A stretch of DNA of 63,182 bases, filler included, from Octopus bimaculoides (Eukaryota), in NCBI RefSeq assembly GCF_001194135.2. It is 5 parts of 5 records of this genome, joined end to end, with 100 filler letters (N's around TTAATTAATTAA, not from the genome) between each part and the next. Parts side by side here need not be neighbours in the genome. Positions count along the whole stretch, not along the records: positions 1 to 24,917 come from NC_068982.1; 4 more parts are not named here. One strand, given 5' to 3'. This document shows positions 411-18,949 of this stretch, piece by piece (position 1 is the stretch's first letter; the number at the start of each line of letters is the position of its first letter). The notes under the pieces were generated by a model. That model had not been told where the DNA came from, made no database searches, and worked only from the letters and a program-made list of their open reading frames with translations. The translations under genes and the position numbers were made by a program.

Positions 411-539
411 AATTATTATTATTATTGCTACACATTTTCTTATTGTTTTAGGCTCGACGTACCATTTATCACGAACTCTCTAGGTTTACGGTCATGGTGA
501 GAAGCTATGACTTGTGTCATGCACATATGTATATATATG

Positions 540-550
<11 letters not shown>

Positions 551-589
<39 letters not shown>

Positions 590-623
590 NNNNNNNNNNN
601 NNNNNNNNNNNNNNNNNNNNNNN

Positions 624-678
<55 letters not shown>
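551..678. repeat. (CA)n and (TA)n microsatellites flanking an N gap
   Basis: Direct reading. Confidence 0.95.
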
Positions 679-679
<1 letters not shown>

Positions 680-699
680 CAACTCTGGTGATGATATCA

Positions 700-1078
700 T
701 TCCACGCATTCCGATCCATGTGGTTGGCTTTAACATGCTTGAGGTGGAGGTCGAGGTGTTGCAACTTCAGATCTTCCTCATTTTGTTTCGTTCATGTCTC
801 CTTTGGTGCACTGCGTCGCCTCTCCAGTGCATGGGTCGCTGCTGTCACAAAAGTTATTGTGGTAGTCTTCCGGTGCTCATCCTGCAGACATGGCCAAATC
901 TTTGCCCTTCGTCAGCTGATGGAAGAACGCACGTGCTGTGGGCCGAAGAAATTGTTTGTATTCATCGACTTCAAGTCTGCATTTGATTGCATCAACTGGA
1001 CCGGCCTATGGAGATCGTTGGAAACCGAACAAGTATCTCAGATTATTGCGCTCCTACGTTCGGCTTATGTAGGTCACA
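700..1078 (+). mobile_element. Non-LTR retrotransposon (LINE) reverse transcriptase fragment, degenerate
   Basis: Translates as SCRHGQIFALRQLMEER..LFVFIDFKSAFDCINWTGLWRSL, matching the LINE RT motifs QIF.LR and FIDF.KAFD.V. Confidence 0.8.
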
Positions 1079-1164
1079 TATAAAAAATAAAACAAGCACA
1101 AACTCTTCTTTTATTTTGCCTGTAAAATAGGTGTGAAACAGGTATATAGATATCAACATATATC

Positions 1165-7219: not shown

Positions 7220-7682
7220 GCTATAACATCAACGTTATAACAAACTTCATCCAACCAAGTCTCACTGTCTTAGAAACAGATACACTGAATAATGTGGTCC
7301 TAAGTGGAACTCGCACACAAAATGGGTGTGTGTGTGTGTGTGTGTGAGAAAGGCAGGATGATCACGACTAGAATGTCTATGATTTTAGGTTTACTCGGTC
7401 AAAGCTGACCTGGTACTGCACAACAATGACAACGTCATTAGCAAAATCAAATAACAAGGAAAACAGCGATGCCGACGACGAGGTAGAGAACGTAACGTGA
7501 CAAGAACTATTTTGTCTATAATTTTGTCTCTTCTGCCACTCACCGCTCTTAAAACGACGAAATACAGCGAACAAAAAAGGTGGGGTTTACATTGATCAAA
7601 AGGGAATCAACAGAAATAAGGAGTGTACAGTTCTATATTTAAGAGATGAGGAATTATGTACATTATTTACACTATTTACATT

Positions 7683-8066
7683 AGAGGGATATATCGTAAA
7701 TATCTCCTTCGAGTAGAAGAAAATATGACCAAAAACTGCGCGTACTCAATCCCATGCAGCTGTTATAGGTTATACAAAGGCGAAACATGTCTCCCCCTCA
7801 AAATAAGGGTAGAGGAACATCGCAAAGCTGTGACACAAGGAGATATTGATAAATCGGGTATAGCTGAGTATGTATGGAAAAATGGAGACCACCTCCCCTT
7901 GTGGGATGAAGTTAAAATAATAGACAGAGAACAATGGAAAATACGAAAACTAAAAGAAGCAGCACATATGCTAGGACACAAATACCTCCTAAGCAGACCG
8001 AGTGCAGATAGGAATAGCATATGGGAACTGGTATTGCGGAAGGATAGGAAAATATTAGATTTATAA
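7683..8066 (+). pseudogene. Penelope-type GIY-YIG endonuclease (C-terminal part of a PLE ORF)
   Basis: KNCAYSIPCSCYRLYKGETCLPLKIRVEEHRKAV..KSGIAEYVW..H...WDEVKIIDRE..RKLKEAAHM, the PLE endonuclease pattern (VY.IPC.C...YIGET...L..R..EH). Confidence 0.9.
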
Positions 8067-8160: not shown

Positions 8161-8231
8161 ATAATAATAATAATAATAACAACATCGAAAAATACCTTAC
8201 GAATGAGAACCCAGGTTCGAAATTTCCCCAA

Positions 8232-8267
8232 GAAGGCTGGAGGGTATTTCAGCCGAAACGTTGTGTT
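8232..8267 (+). ncRNA. Hammerhead ribozyme remnant (CUGAUGA box deleted)
   Basis: Stem II GGCTG/CAGCC, GAAA, CGT-T, GTGT retained; ACACCTGATG, present in the 10751-10790 copy, is missing. Confidence 0.65.
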
Positions 8268-10671
8268 GACAACAAGCAAGATGAAGATAAATATCCGTCA
8301 AATGTAAATAATGTATAAGGAATGTAGAAATTAGAATTATAAATACATAATAAAATTCCCTACTAATGGGGTAGGCCACTTAGGGGAATTCTGGAAAAAC
8401 TCCACACAAAAGGGGTCTAGATAGAGAAACTGTCGATGCTTTATCGACAGTTTCTTTTTCCTGTTTCTTTCCTTCTATGTAGAAAACTCTACTCAGACGC
8501 CACCTTTCGATAAGCACACTTGAAGACAGCACCTGCTTTCTATCCTTACCTTCCTTTTCAAATGATACTTGAAGAAATTGTTGTGAGCTTGGCAAAGTAG
8601 GAAAGCGTCTGTCTTCAAACTTTGAGACGAGTCTGCCATGCAACCATTTTCGCAATAGTCACCAAGTAGAGAAAGATATGCCTCTCTTCCCTGCTCAAGG
8701 AAGGTAGCGCATCGATTTTCACTGTAGACTCGATGGACAATCAAATTCGTCTTGCTTGATACAGCAGAACGCTTTCGTCTTCCTGCAGCGAGTAATCAAC
8801 TCCTAGAATTTTGCGAAGTTATGTAAGCGCATCATCAGAGATGTCAAGTACTTGGTTGATAAACTTGACAATTTTGAGCGCGGTGGACGTTATCTTCAGA
8901 TAAATAATTCATTAGCAAGTCTAATTTATCAGCATCGTTGATATGTTTGTTGTCGTGACTTATACAATTCGACTTCTTAGCCTTCTAATTCACGAACTCT
9001 CCAGAGCCAGCGCATCAATACCATTAGTAAAAACTGCTTGTATCGAATAGCTTAGTTATGTCATCTTTCTGTGGTCGAGATAAAGTGTGTGCGTGTTCTG
9101 CTCCAGGAAGTTGACATTTTCAGCTGGTGTTCATGTACAAGATTATGAATATTTTGGAAATTATCGCCATAAGAATACGGAATGCAAACAACTTATTTAC
9201 TAAATAATCATTGATCAATCTTTATTTATAAGACAGTGATAGAATAATATTATGAACAAAAGAGGATAATGGCATACATAAACAAAAAGCTGAATATTAC
9301 TTTCTCGCAATATTCTCAATGATTAATGAGGATTGTATTACATATTCCGTCTCGAGAACAATGTGTTCAACTTTCAGTAATCATATTCATGCCTATATGT
9401 CTGACCGAATCATGCCGGTTACAGACTTGAAGACCATCATGACTTAGTTTCGTAGTCACTTAAGTGAAGCTTTTTCCGGTCAAAAGCTGTCAAAGTCAAC
9501 TTTACCTTTCTTATTTTCGGGGTCGATAAAATAAGTGTCTGTCGAGTACTAGGATCGATGTAAACAACTTCTTCCTCATCTCAAACTTGCTGACTTTGTG
9601 CCAAAATTAGAAAGAATTATATGAAGCTGTGAACATTTACATATACCTGTCAGCTTAATTTTAAAAGTCCCTATCTAAGATATAGCCAAGCTATATCAAT
9701 TTGACCACTACATCATCAATGGGTCTTGTGTTAAATTTATTCCGGCCGTGACTATTGTATTTTTTCTAGACATCTAGAAACATTATGGCCACCGTGAGAT
9801 CTTTGCAATATAAGACATGATTACTTTCGGGGTCCAGAGGGAGGATACCTCAAACATTTGTAGATTTAGGTTCTCTATGGATCTTACATATTTGATTATG
9901 TCTCTTCACTACAAATGATATGAAATGAAATTTATATTTGTAATTTTTCCATCTTTATAGAAAAATGATAAAAAAGAAAAAAATATGAACGAAGTACACA
10001 GCGTTTAGTATGTGATTATGAAAGTATAATTGAAGATGACTTGTCTCAAGATAATTGAGTATGACCACTGGTAATCTTTCGTAAATGTTTTGTTTCTTTG
10101 TACACCATATTGACCAGACAGCAATATACTTTATACAAAGATAAGAATAGAAACTAATGAAATAAAATTTCTTGACATTTTTAATCTGCAAAAATTTTAT
10201 TCACACTATCAAAATCAATTTCTCTAGCAAAGCTTAATTCATTAATCAATCTTGTGAAATGAACAACTCGAGTGTAGGAAACGTTTTTGATGTTTGAATT
10301 TTCTTAAAAATTTTCCTACTGAAACTGCTGTTGTTGGAATTATTTGCAATATTCTGAAATCATACAAACATATAGAAATATCTCACAAACTCCGTAGTCA
10401 ATCAGTAAATTTAGAGATTCAAAAAGTTTCGGTTCTGGTTTTCTAAATTTCACTTTATATGCTGACTGTAAATGTTGCAGTTTTATAACATCTTTGATAT
10501 TGGCCCACTAACACTAACTCTTTCACTTTTTTGTAGCTTACTTTCAGACATTTCCACAAAAAAAAAATCAAGCTTAAACTTTTACGCAATCAAATGCACT
10601 GTTACTCAATGATTAGCTAAACCATAAAACAGATTTTCTGAAGTAGTTGTCATTTGACGGATCGTCTGTAT

Positions 10672-10843
10672 AATACTGTTCTATATTTAAGAGATGAGAA
10701 ATTCTGTATCTTAGGAACGAGAACTCAGGATTGGGTTCAAAATTCCACCAGGACACCTGATGAAGGCTGCAGAGTAGATCCGAAACGTTGTGGTAACAAC
10801 AAACAAGATGAGGACACATATCCGTCCAATGTAAATAATGTAA
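10672..10843 (+). mobile_element. Short non-coding copy of the Penelope/tRNA/HHR family, inserted in the hAT fossil
   Basis: Perfect 11-bp TSD ATCGTCTGTAT (10661-10671 and 10844-10854). Inverted tail 10672-10708 matches 7628-7660; body matches 8195-8315. Confidence 0.85.
10754..10792 (+). ncRNA. Minimal type-I hammerhead ribozyme motif (stem II degraded)
   Basis: CAC-CTGATGA(10757-10763)-A-GG...CC-GAAA(10782-10785)-CGT-T-GTG. Confidence 0.65.
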
Positions 10844-16079: not shown

Positions 16080-16422
16080 TGACATTTTCCCAAGAGCAAC
16101 GATATGCAAATTCTCTCGATGTTTTGTCGTTCGCAGTAACGAAAACATATTTTCTTTGTTTATGAAAAGAATAAATTTCTTTTAATCAAAAATCTCAACA
16201 AATATTATGAAGGAGAACAGATGTTCTTCGTAACACACGAATCTGTGGCATCAAGAATGAAGATTTGATCAAACTCTCTCTTCTGTTAGAACTGAAATTT
16301 TACTTTCTCACGGTATTTTAAATAAGAAAATACAACCAACAAATACGCAATACATTGTTTAGATACAAAATATTAAAATGGAAAAATGCATCAATTTCTC
16401 TCACATCATACTTATTAAACTG

Positions 16423-16475
16423 GCTTAACTGATGAAGCGACAGAAATTGCCGAAACTGCCGCGTCAGTATTAAGC
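16423..16475 (+). ncRNA. Type-I hammerhead ribozyme, copy 1
   Basis: Stem I GCTTAA/TTAAGC, CTGATGA (16429-16435), stem II GCGA/TTGC, GAAA (16452-16455), stem III ACTGCCGCGTCAGT, GUA cleavage triplet (A16469). Confidence 0.8.
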
Positions 16476-16882
16476 ATTCTCGATCAGCGCTTTTCAGACG
16501 ATTATGGTCCCTGTTAGTGTATATGTTTTCATTCATGTGCGTTATTTACAGCATTAGAGCATTTCAACTCTTATTTCTAGCAATATAGGTCTTTTCTAAC
16601 ACCCTAATCGCATTTATTGATGTATATGTTTTCAGTGATGAACGTTAATTACAGCTTTAGAACGCTTTAGCTCTTATTTCAAGCAACGTAGGTGTTTTCT
16701 AACACTCTAGTCGCATTTCATGACAGTTGTAATTCTCCTTTTTAGTGAAACATTGCAGCCTACTGTTCCTATTAATTTTATATATACACATTAGCGAATC
16801 GCTAAATCATCCAATCATTTGCATGATGGAAACATAAATACTAATGGCGATGCGAGCCCGGGCAGAGCTATAACTGAGCTGG

Positions 16883-16933
16883 TTTAATTGATGAGGCGAC
16901 AGGAATTACTGAAACTGACGCGTCAGTATTAAG
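16883..16933 (+). ncRNA. Type-I hammerhead ribozyme, copy 2 (C3>U)
   Basis: TTAA-TTGATGA-GGCGACAGGAATTACT-GAAA, perfect palindromic stem III ACTGACGCGTCAGT (16914-16927), A16928, then TTAAG. Confidence 0.7.
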
Positions 16934-17181
16934 AATTCTCGATCAGCACTTTTCGGACGATTATGTTAGTGTATATGTTTTCAGTGATGAACGTTAATTA
17001 CAGCTTTAGAACGCTTTAGCTCNNNNNNNNNNNNNNNNNNNNNNNNNNNNNNNNNNNNNNNNNNNNNNNNNNNNNNNNNNNNNNNNNNNNNNNNNNNNNN
17101 NNNNNNNNNNNNNNNNNNNNNNNNNNNNNNNNNNNNNNNNNNNNNNNNNNNNNNNNNNNNNNNNNNNNNNNNNNNNNNNNN

Positions 17182-17214
<33 letters not shown>

Positions 17215-17239
17215 AATCCAAACATGGACAAGCAAGAAA

Positions 17240-17420
17240 AAAAAACCGAAAAAATAACAACGCGAGGACGTTGAATAAGTACAGTGTTATTGGACGTTCA
17301 GGAAAGGAAAGAAAAGAAAGAGGATTTCACGTTTCGAGCGGAGCTCTTCATCAGAAATATAGAAAAAGTCAAAAGAAGGGAAGACGGAGAAAGAAAATCG
17401 CCAGAAAGTATGAGCAGAAT
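17240..17420 (-). mobile_element. Penelope-type terminal repeat fragment containing a hammerhead motif
   Basis: Minus strand ATTT-CTGATGA-A-GAGC-TCC-GCTC-GAAA-CGT-G-AAAT (17324-17358) followed by a pyrimidine-rich tail. Confidence 0.6.
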
Positions 17421-18949
17421 TTAGGTTAGTTGAAATATTTTTGTCGCATATTTCAACTGCTAAAGGCAAATACACTGCAGTTACCGTGGAGAAAAGTCTC
17501 TCTTACGATAAAAAGGTGTGTAAACACCCATTTCGTTCATATATATGGAGAAGGATTATTGCGAAGTGACATTAGCATTACCTTTAATTCCTTTTTTTAT
17601 ACATACACAACCCCAAATAGACCTACACATGTTTCTTCTGAATCGATTAGTAACCGTTGCAATTGCAACCTTACTATGATACTGGTGCAGTTTCATTAGG
17701 GTCTTCACTTTAATATCCTTTGATTTAACTGTTTAAAGTGTTATATTGATTTTCTTTGCGTTCTATGATGTAGATTGGTTAATCACTCGTTTATTCCTTA
17801 TAGTCAGTTATTTCAAAGCATTTCGTTGTTAAAATGTTTATAACTCATTTACATTGAGCAAAAGTAAATTTTCTCATATGAAAGCATCTTAAAGCTTGTT
17901 CTTGTCTAGAATTTATTATATTACCTTCAGATGTAAAAGTTTGATAAAATTATTCTATATATAGGTCACATTTATTAGATTCTGGTCTGTATGGTTTTTC
18001 AGTACTAATTAATTCTCAATTGATAGTATAGTCTTAGTTTCTGTCTTTTATAGACCAGATTAATCTACTCAGACTGGTCTGGAATTTTATACTTTTATCT
18101 CTAATGAAATTAAGTGATCAACCAGTCTTGTTTTGAAAATTAGTGCAGTCGAACCGATGTAAAAGTATTCGTTTTCCTCAGATGTAAGTTTACATTTATA
18201 TATTACATTTTTAGTTTTATGTTTATTATTCACATAACAGGATTCTCGTTTAGAACAGTTGCAGAGATAATTTTTTTTATATATTTCTCAGATTTAGCAA
18301 TAATTTGATAATTCATAGTTAAATCAAATTCATTTCTATTAAGTTTTTTATTACTGTTTACTTTTTCATATAACGTTATATTTGTTCTATTTCTACACAA
18401 TTTTTATTCAATTCTACGTTATTAATTTTATTAAATTTGGTTGTCTCCCTTTCCACGACTTTCAAATTCTTGGCGTTTTCTTCTATTGAGTTTTTTTTTA
18501 TTCCGCTTGACATTATTCTGAATATTTACTTTGCTACTCTGATAGCTTTTTTGAAATTTCGATATTATTTTTACATTGTGTTGCTATTATTTGGGTTATT
18601 ATTTGTGCTACTATTTGTCCATACGGATCTTATGTTTATTAAAAATCTATATCTATGATTTATAGGAAAATATCTTTCTATTGCTGTATTGAACAATTTA
18701 GAAAAATTATAATTTATTTGCTTACCACATGGAACAATTAACCACAAAGTATTTTTTGAGTTATAATTATGATTATAATTTTGATGTTTAACCAGTTTTT
18801 GAAGGGGTAAGTATTCTTCCATTTCGATCATTATTTAGGTTAGCGTTTATTTTATCTTTAAAATTTTTAGTTGTTTTTATATTAAAAGAATTTGCGTTTA
18901 ATGGCTTGACATTTCAACCTCGACAGTCAGGTAACAATTATAGTTCTCT

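What the first reader, a model, noticed from the sequence alone, without database searches (positions are those of the whole stretch)
16419..17022. Tandem type-I hammerhead ribozymes 459 bp apart: candidate octopus retrozyme/circRNA unit
Seen: two same-strand HHRs. Their combined consensus GCTTAA-CTGATGA-GGCGA-CAGGAA-TTGCC-GAAA-CTGACGCGTCAGT-A-TTAAGC gives a complete core, 6-bp stem I, 5-bp stem II, a perfectly palindromic stem III and a GUA cleavage triplet. Each copy has its own point defects (copy 1: A-C at the base of stem II; copy 2: C3>U). The downstream sequence is also duplicated. Known: animal non-LTR retrozymes are tandem, protein-free repeats of a few hundred nt with type-I HHRs, whose self-cleavage releases monomers that circularise; palindromic stem III favours dimeric cleavage. 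Inference: this is a partly decayed retrozyme dimer whose cleavage-to-cleavage monomer is 16470-16928 (459 nt). No ORF or SINE family seen elsewhere in the window explains it.
Basis: partly seen in the sequence, partly recalled or inferred. Interest (0 to 1): 0.9.

Follow-up and report, generated by a model that had tools for sequence, protein, structure and literature searches.

The report
Decayed hammerhead-ribozyme repeat in octopus DNA
Two worn-out copies of a small self-cutting RNA motif (a hammerhead ribozyme) sit 459 bases apart in a protein-free repeat; the repeat belongs to an old family of about 100-300 copies shared by several octopus species, a kind of mobile element already known from other animals, and I found no evidence that this locus still makes RNA circles.

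Summary
Type-I hammerhead (HHR) motifs lie at 16420-16475 and 16879-16934 on the + strand, with cleavage sites 459 nt apart. A motif of copy-1 quality is expected 0.0025 times per window by chance.

Reads from four organism labels show a repeat family of roughly 100-300 HHR copies per genome. Three helix III variants in the family are all perfect palindromes, which fits cleavage as a dimer. The unit has no ORF and 37% GC. Its usual length is about 350 nt; this copy carries a 103-nt internal duplication.

This locus is an old fossil. The flank-HHR1 junction is shared with a second species, and both ribozymes are damaged.

Weak points:
- Rfam hammerhead models give no hit.
- RNA-seq shows only sparse family transcripts on both strands, and circularity could not be tested.
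- The HHR2 segment is confirmed in only 2 of 4 runs.
- The last ~60 nt before the gap are unsupported.

Penelope-like elements with their own minimal HHRs lie in the same window.

Verdict: a new, decayed member of the known non-LTR retrozyme / Penelope-associated HHR repeat class.

The parts
16420..16475 (+). Hammerhead copy 1 (type I). The core CUGAUGA...GAAA is intact, with a GUA triplet and cleavage after A16469. Defects: A10.1.C11.1 (16436/16451) and a C.U mismatch in helix III (16459/16464). This is also the left edge of the repeat.
   Evidence: Read depth jumps from single copy to about 100-fold exactly at 16420. The family majority repairs 16436 (G), 16439 (A), 16442 (G) and 16459 (A).
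16470..16928 (+). Cleavage-to-cleavage unit, 459 nt and 36.8% GC. No ATG/GTG/TTG-started ORF inside the unit exceeds 30 aa, and the longest stop-free stretch is 50 aa.
   Evidence: Exact contigs tile 16380-16961 in runs X1 and X2.
16518..16723 (+). Internal tandem duplication of a 103-nt segment (16518-16620 and 16621-16723, 82% identical). Relatives usually carry one copy. This core is about 10 times more abundant in the genome than the HHR.
   Evidence: Joints that skip 105-116 nt appear in other copies. Depth is 107,259 here against 8,778 at the HHR and 49.8 for single-copy sequence in X1.
16847..16878 (+). Variable linker in front of HHR2. In relatives the homologous stretch reads ...GAAGCGGGTCCGGAAAGACCCGAAC..., a hairpin with the same CGGAAA loop as helix II. 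It may be a vestige of a duplicated helix II module.
   Evidence: Letters between joints; window sequence.
16879..16934 (+). Hammerhead copy 2. It has C3>U (16888), a weakened helix II (G.U, C.A, G.U) and a perfect 14-nt palindromic helix III. Cleavage would fall after A16928.
   Evidence: The family majority has C at 16888, A at 16898, G at 16901, A at 16903, G at 16908 and C at 16910. An exact contig exists only in X1 and X2.
16935..16965 (+). Start of a second unit, homologous to 16476-16506.
   Evidence: repeat D3. Exact contigs reach 16961.
16966..17022 (+). Sequence before the gap. 16970-17022 is 100% identical to 16621-16673. No exact contig in any of four runs covers it, so it may be an assembly artefact.
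   Evidence: repeat D1; depth 0 from 16974 onward, and the unitig 16561-16717 is unbranched.
17023..17181 (.). Assembly gap of 159 N. The right end of the element is unknown. (TA)n follows at about 17182-17212.

Best explanation
This is an old, decayed genomic insertion of a protein-free, hammerhead-bearing short-repeat retroelement. It works like an animal non-LTR retrozyme, which is the same thing as a non-autonomous Penelope-associated HHR repeat.

In intact family members the proposed cycle is:
1. Head-to-tail units are transcribed.
2. The type-I HHR folds, most likely as a double hammerhead in which two copies pair through the 12-14-nt palindromic helix III.
3. It cuts after GUA (or GUC), releasing monomers of about 350 nt with 5'-OH and 2',3'-cyclic phosphate ends.
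4. A tRNA ligase can circularise these monomers.
5. A Penelope-like reverse transcriptase can copy them back into DNA.

Shown here: the motif, its family, the intact consensus, the preserved palindromes, the lack of coding capacity, low-level transcription of relatives, and the age of this copy. Inferred: cleavage, the dimer mode, circularisation and the mobilising enzyme.

The locus in the window is a fossil. Both of its ribozymes carry inactivating or weakening changes.
For: - Not chance.
- The family starts exactly at 16420 next to single-copy flank. HHR copy number is about 176 (X1: 8,778/49.8) and about 126 in a second species (X14: 4,464/35.4). Raw reads give about 105-150-fold depth against 1-2-fold for the flank.
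- Majority letters restore a canonical HHR: 16436 A>G in 255/323 reads, 16439 G>A in 257/324, 16459 C>A in 254/293. For 16888 T>C the count is 27/38.
- No variant of CUGAUGA or GAAA is among the 40 best-supported differences, whereas loops and stems vary at 5-25%.
- Helix III occurs in three forms: ACUGACGCGUCAGU; ACUGACGUCAGU in about 25% of reads; and ACUGACCGGUCAGU, where 16461 G>C and 16462 C>G occur at matching counts. All three are perfect palindromes.
- The consensus homodimer folds with a 14-bp intermolecular helix III at -44.5 kcal/mol, against 2 x -12.5 for two monomers.
- Contigs from other loci and other species span body-end, linker, HHR and body-start.
- GC is 36.8% and there is no ORF.
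- RNA assemblies contain family contigs that include the HHR.
- An organism B contig covers 16250-16523 with 15 substitutions and 2 indels, so the insertion is orthologous and old.
- Penelope-like elements with HHRs co-occur in the same window, as reported for retrozyme-bearing genomes (PMC7229834; bioRxiv 10.64898/2026.07.22.740005).
Against: - No Rfam hammerhead model scores either copy, even at E<=10 on 75-nt slices.
- The HHR fold is not the predicted minimum-energy fold of either copy.
- The circular monomer is not unusually self-paired (z = -1.2).
- RNA-seq shows only a few reads per bin, on both strands, all from diverged copies, with no pile-up of ends at the cleavage site.
- The family is small (about 10^2 copies) compared with published retrozyme families (10^3-10^5).
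- The tandem arrangement at this locus rests on a contig present in only 2 of 4 runs, joined through a 36-nt segment shared by about 5 copies.
- No sequence similarity to the Penelope-like loci fetched.
- Array sizes at other loci could not be measured.
Confidence: 0.7

Rival explanations
1. A still-active retrozyme dimer. This locus is transcribed, both ribozymes cut, and a 459-nt circRNA is produced. This is the strong form of the first reader's reading.
For: Copy 1 keeps all core nucleotides and a GUA site. Copies 1 and 2 can still pair through helix III in silico. Family transcripts exist.
Against: No RNA read at 95% identity or better lies on the locus; all laid reads are 90-95% or lower and only partly aligned. 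Copy 1 lacks the conserved G10.1-C11.1 pair. Copy 2 has U3 and a +1.8 kcal/mol HHR fold. The insertion predates a species split and has drifted about 10% from the family majority.
Confidence: 0.07
2. A Penelope-type partial-tandem insertion rather than a circle-forming retrozyme. The unit would be a non-autonomous derivative of a Penelope-like element's pseudo-LTR. It would have been inserted as a 5'-truncated copy plus a full copy next to a (TA)n target, and its HHR would process linear element transcripts only.
For: - The element begins abruptly with the HHR, 50 nt before the cleavage site rather than at it.
- (TA)n lies on the far side of the gap; microsatellite targets and partial tandems are typical of these elements (PMC8557442).
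- Pieces of Penelope-like elements with pseudo-LTR HHRs are in the window.
- A 2026 preprint argues that animal retrozymes are Penelope derivatives (10.64898/2026.07.22.740005).
Against: The HHR lacks the unpaired base between A9 and G10.1 and has a full helix III, unlike the min-HHRs of the Penelope-like loci fetched here (PMC4209133). BLAST finds no similarity to those loci. This rival differs from the best explanation mainly in whether circles form, which was not testable here.
Confidence: 0.17
3. The dimer is an assembly artefact or a rare allele. The locus really holds one HHR plus body, and the HHR2 contig belongs to another copy or haplotype.
For: 16808-16919 has zero exact support in X3 (46x) and X6. 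16962-17022 has none in any of the four runs. The body-to-HHR2 link runs through 16772-16807, which is present at about 5 copies. X9 has almost no depth at 16872-16899 at 90% identity or better.
Against: The HHR2 contig is present at single-copy depth in two independent samples, X1 and X2. Other loci in four organism labels show the same order of body-end, linker, HHR and body-start, so head-to-tail order is a family trait even if this locus is polymorphic.
Confidence: 0.2
4. A chance resemblance to a hammerhead in AT-rich repetitive DNA.
For: No Rfam hit. The loose pattern CTGATGA..GAAA..GTH occurs 6 times in the window against 0.77 expected.
Against: The full descriptor is expected 0.0025 times per window. 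The family majority from more than 100 copies in several species is a defect-free HHR with an invariant core and palindromic helix III variants.
Confidence: 0.01

Closest known systems
Animal non-LTR retrozymes (Cervera & de la Pena 2020, PMC7229834), for example the Mytilus galloprovincialis and Acropora millepora repeats
   Same: A type-I HHR in each unit of a protein-free, AT-rich head-to-tail repeat of a few hundred nt. The family is multi-copy and species- or genus-specific in sequence. It co-occurs with Penelope-like elements.
   Different: The family is small (about 10^2 HHR copies, against thousands to 10^5). Helix III is much longer (5 bp plus a 4-nt loop, a 12-14-nt perfect palindrome) than the 1-2-bp stems usually described. 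Abundant circRNA was not shown; coverage is only sparse in what look like standard cDNA libraries. This copy is not highly self-paired. Array length is unknown.
Minimal HHRs in the pseudo-LTRs of Penelope-like elements (Cervera & de la Pena 2014, PMC4209133)
   Same: Type-I topology, a conserved G10.1-C11.1 pair in the consensus, and palindromic positions around helix III that imply dimeric action. Such elements are physically present in the same window (10757-10795 and about 8230).
   Different: There is no unpaired base between A9 and G10.1, a real helix III is present, and helix II is 5 bp rather than 6-8 bp. The motifs are 459 nt apart with no RT-EN ORF between them. No sequence similarity to the octopus Penelope-like loci fetched.
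Newt/axolotl satellite 2 and Schistosoma Sm-alpha hammerheads (dimer-dependent type-I HHRs in tandem or SINE-like repeats; from PMC7229834 and my own knowledge)
   Same: Tandem or dispersed repeats of about 330-350 nt carrying a type-I HHR whose palindromic helix III or loop 3 favours a double-hammerhead.
   Different: In those, helix III is 1-2 bp with a palindromic tetraloop, so the monomer is unstable. Here the monomer hairpin (5 bp) could itself be stable, so dependence on a dimer is less certain.

Membership tests
Hammerhead ribozyme, type I (structural definition) | Conserved core C3-U-G-A-N-G-A9, G12-A-A14, A15.1-U16.1, and H17 not G | tested here: met
   Copy 1 has the full core and A17. 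Copy 2 fails at C3 (U at 16888). The family majority is fully canonical, and no core variant is among the best-supported differences.
Hammerhead ribozyme, type I (structural definition) | Three helices around the core, helix I open-ended, and a G10.1-C11.1 closing pair | tested here: met
   The consensus has 5/5/5 bp with G10.1-C11.1. Copy 1 has A.C at 10.1/11.1 and copy 2 has G.U plus a C.A mismatch. The feature is therefore met for the family and impaired at this locus.
Hammerhead ribozyme, type I (structural definition) | Score at or above the gathering threshold of an Rfam hammerhead covariance model | tested here: not met
   No hammerhead family is listed at the gathering threshold, nor at E<=10 on 723-nt or 75-nt slices. 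The consensus sequence could not be submitted to the tool.
Hammerhead ribozyme, type I (structural definition) | Mg2+-dependent self-cleavage 3' of H17 | not testable with these tools
   This needs in vitro transcription. RNA-seq depth over the HHR was too low to see ends.
Hammerhead ribozyme, type I (structural definition) | Loop 1 - loop 2 tertiary contacts | tested here: inconclusive
   Helix I (5 bp) could continue after an internal loop (G16423 opposite 16475-84) into CUG/CRG. Loop 2 is CGGAAA. I could apply no sequence signature of the known contacts.
Non-LTR retrozyme (PMC7229834) | A type-I HHR in each unit of a short head-to-tail repeat (about 150-450 bp, dimers to multimers) | tested here: inconclusive
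   The window shows HHR, a 459-nt unit, HHR, and the start of the next unit. Other loci show body-end, HHR and body-start in that order. However, HHR2 is confirmed in only 2 of 4 runs, and array sizes elsewhere could not be measured.
Non-LTR retrozyme (PMC7229834) | No coding capacity, and GC below 45% | tested here: met
   No ATG/GTG/TTG-started ORF inside the unit exceeds 30 aa, and the longest stop-free stretch is 50 aa. GC is 36.8%.
Non-LTR retrozyme (PMC7229834) | Multi-copy, dispersed in the genome | tested here: met
   About 100-300 HHR-bearing copies in four organism labels.
Non-LTR retrozyme (PMC7229834) | Expressed as abundant monomer-length linear and circular RNA | tested here: inconclusive
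   Family transcripts are only sparse and on both strands. Their selection method is not on record, so circles may be under-represented. A circle junction cannot be told apart from a tandem read-through.
Non-LTR retrozyme (PMC7229834) | A highly self-paired monomer | tested here: not met
   The circular fold of 16470-16928 gives -97.4 kcal/mol against -90.3 +/- 5.9 for shuffles (z = -1.2), with 57% of bases paired. This was tested only on this decayed, internally duplicated copy.
Non-LTR retrozyme (PMC7229834) | Co-occurrence with Penelope-like elements | tested here: met
   The ORF at 7656-8066 belongs to a family with RVT_1 + HTH_animal + a C-terminal domain. A pseudo-LTR-type min-HHR lies 250-360 nt after that ORF in three loci, and at 10757 in the window.
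Penelope-like element pseudo-LTR min-HHR (PMC4209133) | An unpaired nucleotide between A9 and G10.1; minimal or absent helix III; motifs flanking an RT-EN ORF | tested here: not met
   The main HHR goes directly from A9 to G10.1, has a 5-bp helix III, and its two copies enclose 459 nt without an ORF. In contrast, the window's 10757 motif meets these features.

The most novel reading that the evidence does not exclude
Octopuses carry a genus-wide retrozyme lineage whose hammerhead has an unusually long, strictly palindromic helix III (12-14 nt, kept palindromic through a 2-nt deletion and a double substitution). That would make cleavage obligatorily bimolecular (a double hammerhead). A few intact master copies would still make about 350-nt circRNAs. 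Separately, a repeat of about 10^4 copies next door carries a Penelope-style minimal HHR, and one variant of it dominates the transcriptome.
Probability: 0.2. Interest if true: 0.45.

Novelty: new member of a known kind. Interest (0 to 1): 0.3.

Why it matters
If family members are active, cephalopods would join cnidarians, bivalves and amphibians as hosts of ribozyme-made circRNAs. The unusually long palindromic helix III would be a natural test case for monomer versus dimer hammerhead cleavage.

The window also shows three different hammerhead-type motifs within 10 kb:
- the retrozyme-like HHR;
- a Penelope pseudo-LTR min-HHR;
- a min-HHR-like motif in a repeat of about 10^4 copies.

This illustrates how much of an octopus genome's repeat fraction may be ribozyme-linked. 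As it stands, this locus is a fossil of a known kind of element and does not change current understanding.

Tried and rejected
1. Rfam scans at the gathering threshold and at E<=10 on the region and on each copy gave no hammerhead hit. The top hits were chance snoRNA or lncRNA fragments.
2. Minimum-energy folding of each copy does not give the HHR fold. This is not decisive for type-I HHRs.
3. Self-BLAST found no other copy of the unit in the window.
4. I tried to fetch other family copies by treating the open minus-strand frame across the HHR as a 'protein'. An exact look-up and a profile search both found nothing.
5. Exact-pattern scans of the metagenome and viral collections for the HHR consensus gave 0 hits.
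6. No PacBio runs are listed for this stretch, so the gap and array sizes could not be resolved.
7. The circular fold of the monomer is not specially structured (one search timed out).
8. I first read the CTGATGA..CGAAACGTTGTG motif at 10757 as a chance match inside a tRNA-SINE. I rejected that after finding the same motif downstream of the RT-HTH ORFs in three octopus loci.
9. Calling the ORF at 7656-8066 a GIY-YIG nuclease rests on my recollection of the motif (VYSIPCSCGK-YKGET...EH). Pfam and a PDB profile search did not confirm it.
10. I tested in vivo cleavage of the abundant minus-strand motif by looking for read ends. There was no pile-up.
Full report
**What is in the sequence.**

On the + strand there are two hammerhead-like motifs with the type-I layout, in which helix I is open.
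- Copy 1 reads CTGG-CTTAA-CTGATGA-AGCGA-CAGAAA-TTGCC-GAA-ACTGCCGCGTCAGT-A|TTAAGC and spans 16420-16475. The cut would fall after A16469.
- Copy 2 reads CTGG-TTTAA-TTGATGA-GGCGA-CAGGAA-TTACT-GAA-ACTGACGCGTCAGT-A|TTAAGA and spans 16879-16934. The cut would fall after A16928.

The two copies sit inside an 87-nt direct repeat, 16420-16506 against 16879-16965, that is 89% identical. The cleavage sites are 459 nt apart.

The unit between them has these properties:
- It contains a 103-nt tandem duplication, 16518-16620 and 16621-16723, at 82% identity.
- Its GC content is 36.8%.
- No ORF with a start codon inside the unit exceeds 30 aa, and the longest stop-free stretch is 50 aa.

**Is it more than chance?**

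A loose pattern, CTGATGA..GAAA..GTH, is common: 6 hits against 0.77 expected. A full descriptor requires the core, three helices, U16.1 and H17. It finds only these two sites in the window on either strand. In 400 random sequences with the window's first-order composition, a hit of copy-1 quality is expected 0.0025 times per window. A hit of copy-2 quality is expected 0.055 times.

Rfam gives no hammerhead hit at the gathering threshold, nor at E<=10, even on 75-nt slices. I report this as a failed formal test. It probably reflects the point defects of both copies and an atypically long helix III. The tool would not accept the consensus sequence, so that could not be tested.

**The family.**

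I laid public DNA reads and contigs on the locus. Sequence upstream of 16420 is single copy. From exactly 16420 onward, depth rises about 100-fold.

Copy-number estimates are:
- about 176 HHR-bearing copies (X1: 8,778/49.8);
- about 126 in a second species label (X14: 4,464/35.4);
- raw-read depth of about 105-150 against 1-2 for the flank.

The central 16500-16600 segment is roughly ten times more abundant.

The majority letters of the family repair every defect (16888; the other copy-2 positions):

| Position | Change | Reads |
|---|---|---|
| 16436 | A>G | 255/323 |
| 16439 | G>A | 257/324 |
| 16442 | A>G | 267/328 |
| 16459 | C>A | 254/293 |
| 16475 | C>A | 328/387 |
| 16888 | T>C | 27/38 |

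In copy 2 the majority also has 16898 A, 16901 G, 16903 A, 16908 G and 16910 C.

The family HHR is therefore CUUAA-CUGAUGA-GGCAA-CGGAAA-UUGCC-GAAA-CUGACGCGUCAGU-A|UUAAG. It has 5-bp helices I, II and III and a G10.1-C11.1 pair. The cleavage triplet is GUA, with GUC in about 8% of reads.

No variant of CUGAUGA or GAAA is among the 40 best-supported differences. Loop and stem positions vary at 5-25%.

**Helix III.**

Three versions occur in the family:
- the 14-nt ACUGACGCGUCAGU;
- a 2-nt-shorter ACUGACGUCAGU, in about 100 of about 400 reads;
- ACUGACCGGUCAGU, where 16461 G>C (38 reads) and 16462 C>G (32 reads) occur at matching counts.

All three are perfect palindromes. In a monomer hairpin the central four bases would be a loop under no pairing constraint. 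Preserved palindromy therefore fits pairing between two ribozymes, the double hammerhead. This is the mode described for animal type-I HHRs in tandem repeats (PMC4209133, PMC7229834). A caveat is that a 2-nt inversion inside a palindrome is a single event that keeps palindromy automatically.

In silico, two consensus HHRs form a 14-bp intermolecular helix III at -44.5 kcal/mol, against 2 x -12.5 for the monomers.

**State of this locus.**

Energies of the HHR fold compared with the minimum free energy (MFE) are:

| Sequence | HHR fold (kcal/mol) | MFE (kcal/mol) |
|---|---|---|
| Family consensus | -9.6 | -12.5 |
| Copy 1 | -7.3 | -15.7 |
| Copy 2 | +1.8 | -14.6 |

Copy 1 has lost the conserved G10.1-C11.1 pair. 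Copy 2 has lost C3. From established hammerhead knowledge, C3 pairs with G8 in the active site.

A contig from a second species label covers 16250-16523 with 15 substitutions and 2 indels. The flank-HHR1 junction is therefore orthologous, and the insertion predates that species split. I conclude that the locus is an old, decayed copy.

**Reliability of the tandem arrangement.**

At 99% identity or better, exact contigs tile 16380-16961 in runs X1 and X2. These include a single-copy-depth contig, 16786-16938, that carries the linker and HHR2.

The weaknesses are:
- X3 (46x) and X6 have no exact support for 16808-16919.
- X9 has almost none at 90% identity or better.
- The join between the body and the HHR2 contig runs through 16772-16807, which is present at about 5 copies.
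- No run supports 16962-17022, which duplicates 16621-16673 exactly and abuts the 159-N gap.

So the second copy is either polymorphic or, less likely, misplaced, and the last ~60 nt are doubtful.

Independently of this locus, contigs from other loci in four organism labels run body-end, a homologous about 25-32-nt linker, HHR, then body-start. Head-to-tail order around the HHR is therefore a family trait. Many relatives skip about 105-116 nt where this copy has its 103-nt duplication. That gives a usual unit of about 350 nt.

**RNA.**

Three 2026 cDNA runs were sampled at about 6% each. They give only tens of reads, all 95% identical or less, partly aligned, and on both strands. They lie mostly on the abundant central segment.

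Older RNA assemblies contain a few low-depth family contigs that include the HHR. One contig's homology starts at 16471, right at the cleavage site, but this is a single case.

No pile-up of ends was seen. A circle junction cannot be told apart from tandem read-through. Expression of relatives is therefore shown at a low level, while cleavage and circularity are untested.

The circular fold of this monomer is not exceptional (z = -1.2, 57% of bases paired).

**Context in the window.**

The ORF at 7656-8066 has octopus homologues, named Octopus vulgaris and O. sinensis by their sources. A profile search shows its family as RVT_1 + HTH_animal + this C-terminal domain. I take that domain to be the GIY-YIG nuclease of Penelope-like elements. 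That reading rests on the motif as I recall it, and Pfam and PDB searches did not confirm it.

In three fetched octopus loci, a minimal HHR sits 250-360 nt after that ORF, and again inverted upstream. It reads ACAC-CUGANGA-A-GGCYGG...CRGCC-GAAAC-GUU-GUGG. It has the unpaired base after A9 and a U-A to C-G compensatory change in helix II. The window holds this motif at 10757-10795 and a 5'-deleted copy near 8230.

This matches the published Penelope pseudo-LTR min-HHR (PMC4209133). It also satisfies the reported co-occurrence of retrozymes with these elements (PMC7229834; 10.64898/2026.07.22.740005). BLAST finds no similarity between these loci and the main unit, so no direct parent was identified.

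**After the gap.**

17214-17510 is a repeat of about 10^4 copies (X1: up to 679,829/50). Its minus strand carries AUUU-CUGAUGA-A-GAGC-UCC-GCUC-GAAAC-GU-G|AAAU. This has Penelope-style min-HHR geometry, but with G at position 17 in this copy and in most copies, and C in about 22%.

An alternative reading uses a 4-bp helix III and GUC at 17295-17293. It is expected 0.002 times per window under a descriptor I tailored after seeing the motif.

RNA reads on this repeat are dominated by one variant that is rare in DNA. They show no break at either candidate cleavage site.

**Comparison and verdict.**

In function and architecture this is closest to the animal non-LTR retrozymes. Shared features are the type-I HHR, the protein-free AT-rich unit of about 350 nt, the head-to-tail order, the multi-copy family, and co-occurring Penelope-like elements.

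It differs in these ways:
- the family is small;
- helix III is long and fully palindromic;
- there is no evidence of abundant circles.

It does not fit the Penelope pseudo-LTR min-HHR definition. I found no paper in the searchable library that reports hammerhead repeats in cephalopods, but such repeats are described as widespread in invertebrates, molluscs included.

I rate it a new, decayed member of a known kind, with interest 0.3.

Noticed in passing
window 17214-17510 (minus strand; motif 17358->17324, alternative reading to 17293): A repeat of about 10^4 copies per genome lies right after the gap. Its minus strand has a Penelope-style minimal-hammerhead layout: AUUU-CUGAUGA-A-GAGC-UCC-GCUC-GAAAC-GU-G|AAAU. 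Position 17 is G here and in most copies, and C in about 22%. The element ends in (TA)n. In RNA-seq one variant that is rare in DNA (17283T, 17293A, 17310T, 17331A, 17362T, 17366T) makes up most reads. There is no pile-up of read ends at the putative cut sites.
   Followed up: partly
window 7656-8066 (+), about 8225-8270 (+), 10757-10795 (+); L001 10942, L002 7497 and 5258(-), L003 7020 and 4265(-): Pieces of a Penelope-like element. The ORF fragment belongs to a family with RVT_1 + HTH_animal + a C-terminal (GIY-YIG-like, unconfirmed) domain. It is followed 160-360 nt later by a min-HHR, ACAC-CUGANGA-A-GGCYGG..CRGCC-GAAAC-GUU-GUGG, with a compensatory U-A/C-G change in helix II. Inverted copies lie upstream of the ORF in two loci.
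   Followed up: partly
window 16808-16919 and 16962-17022: The HHR2-bearing segment is exact in runs X1 and X2 but has no support at 99% identity or better in X3 and X6, so it is either polymorphic or an allele that has diverged. The 53 nt before the gap duplicate 16621-16673 perfectly and are unsupported in all four runs, which suggests an assembly artefact.
   Followed up: partly
window 16847-16878 and homologous linkers in other copies (letters between joints): In relatives, the linker upstream of the HHR reads ...UGAAGC-GGGUC-CGGAAA-GACCC-GAAC.... This is a hairpin with the same CGGAAA loop as helix II but a different, still complementary stem. It looks like a vestigial duplicate of the helix II module, or a second degenerate hammerhead half.
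   Followed up: no
window 16500-16600 and 16650-16700: The central 103-nt segment of the unit is about 10 times more abundant in the genome than the HHR (about 2,000 against about 180 copies in X1). It is therefore shared with HHR-less relatives or with another repeat family.
   Followed up: no
reads adjoining 16521-16522 and 17360: Copies of both the HHR family and the abundant repeat are sometimes interrupted by the same perfect 28-nt palindrome, GGTTCGTCCATCGATCGATGGACGAACC. It is presumably the end of another mobile element.
   Followed up: no
window 514-1083 (+): An ORF fragment with a weak reverse-transcriptase match (RVT_1, E = 3e-4, below the Pfam cut-off), next to a microsatellite and a gap. 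It is another decayed retroelement.
   Followed up: no
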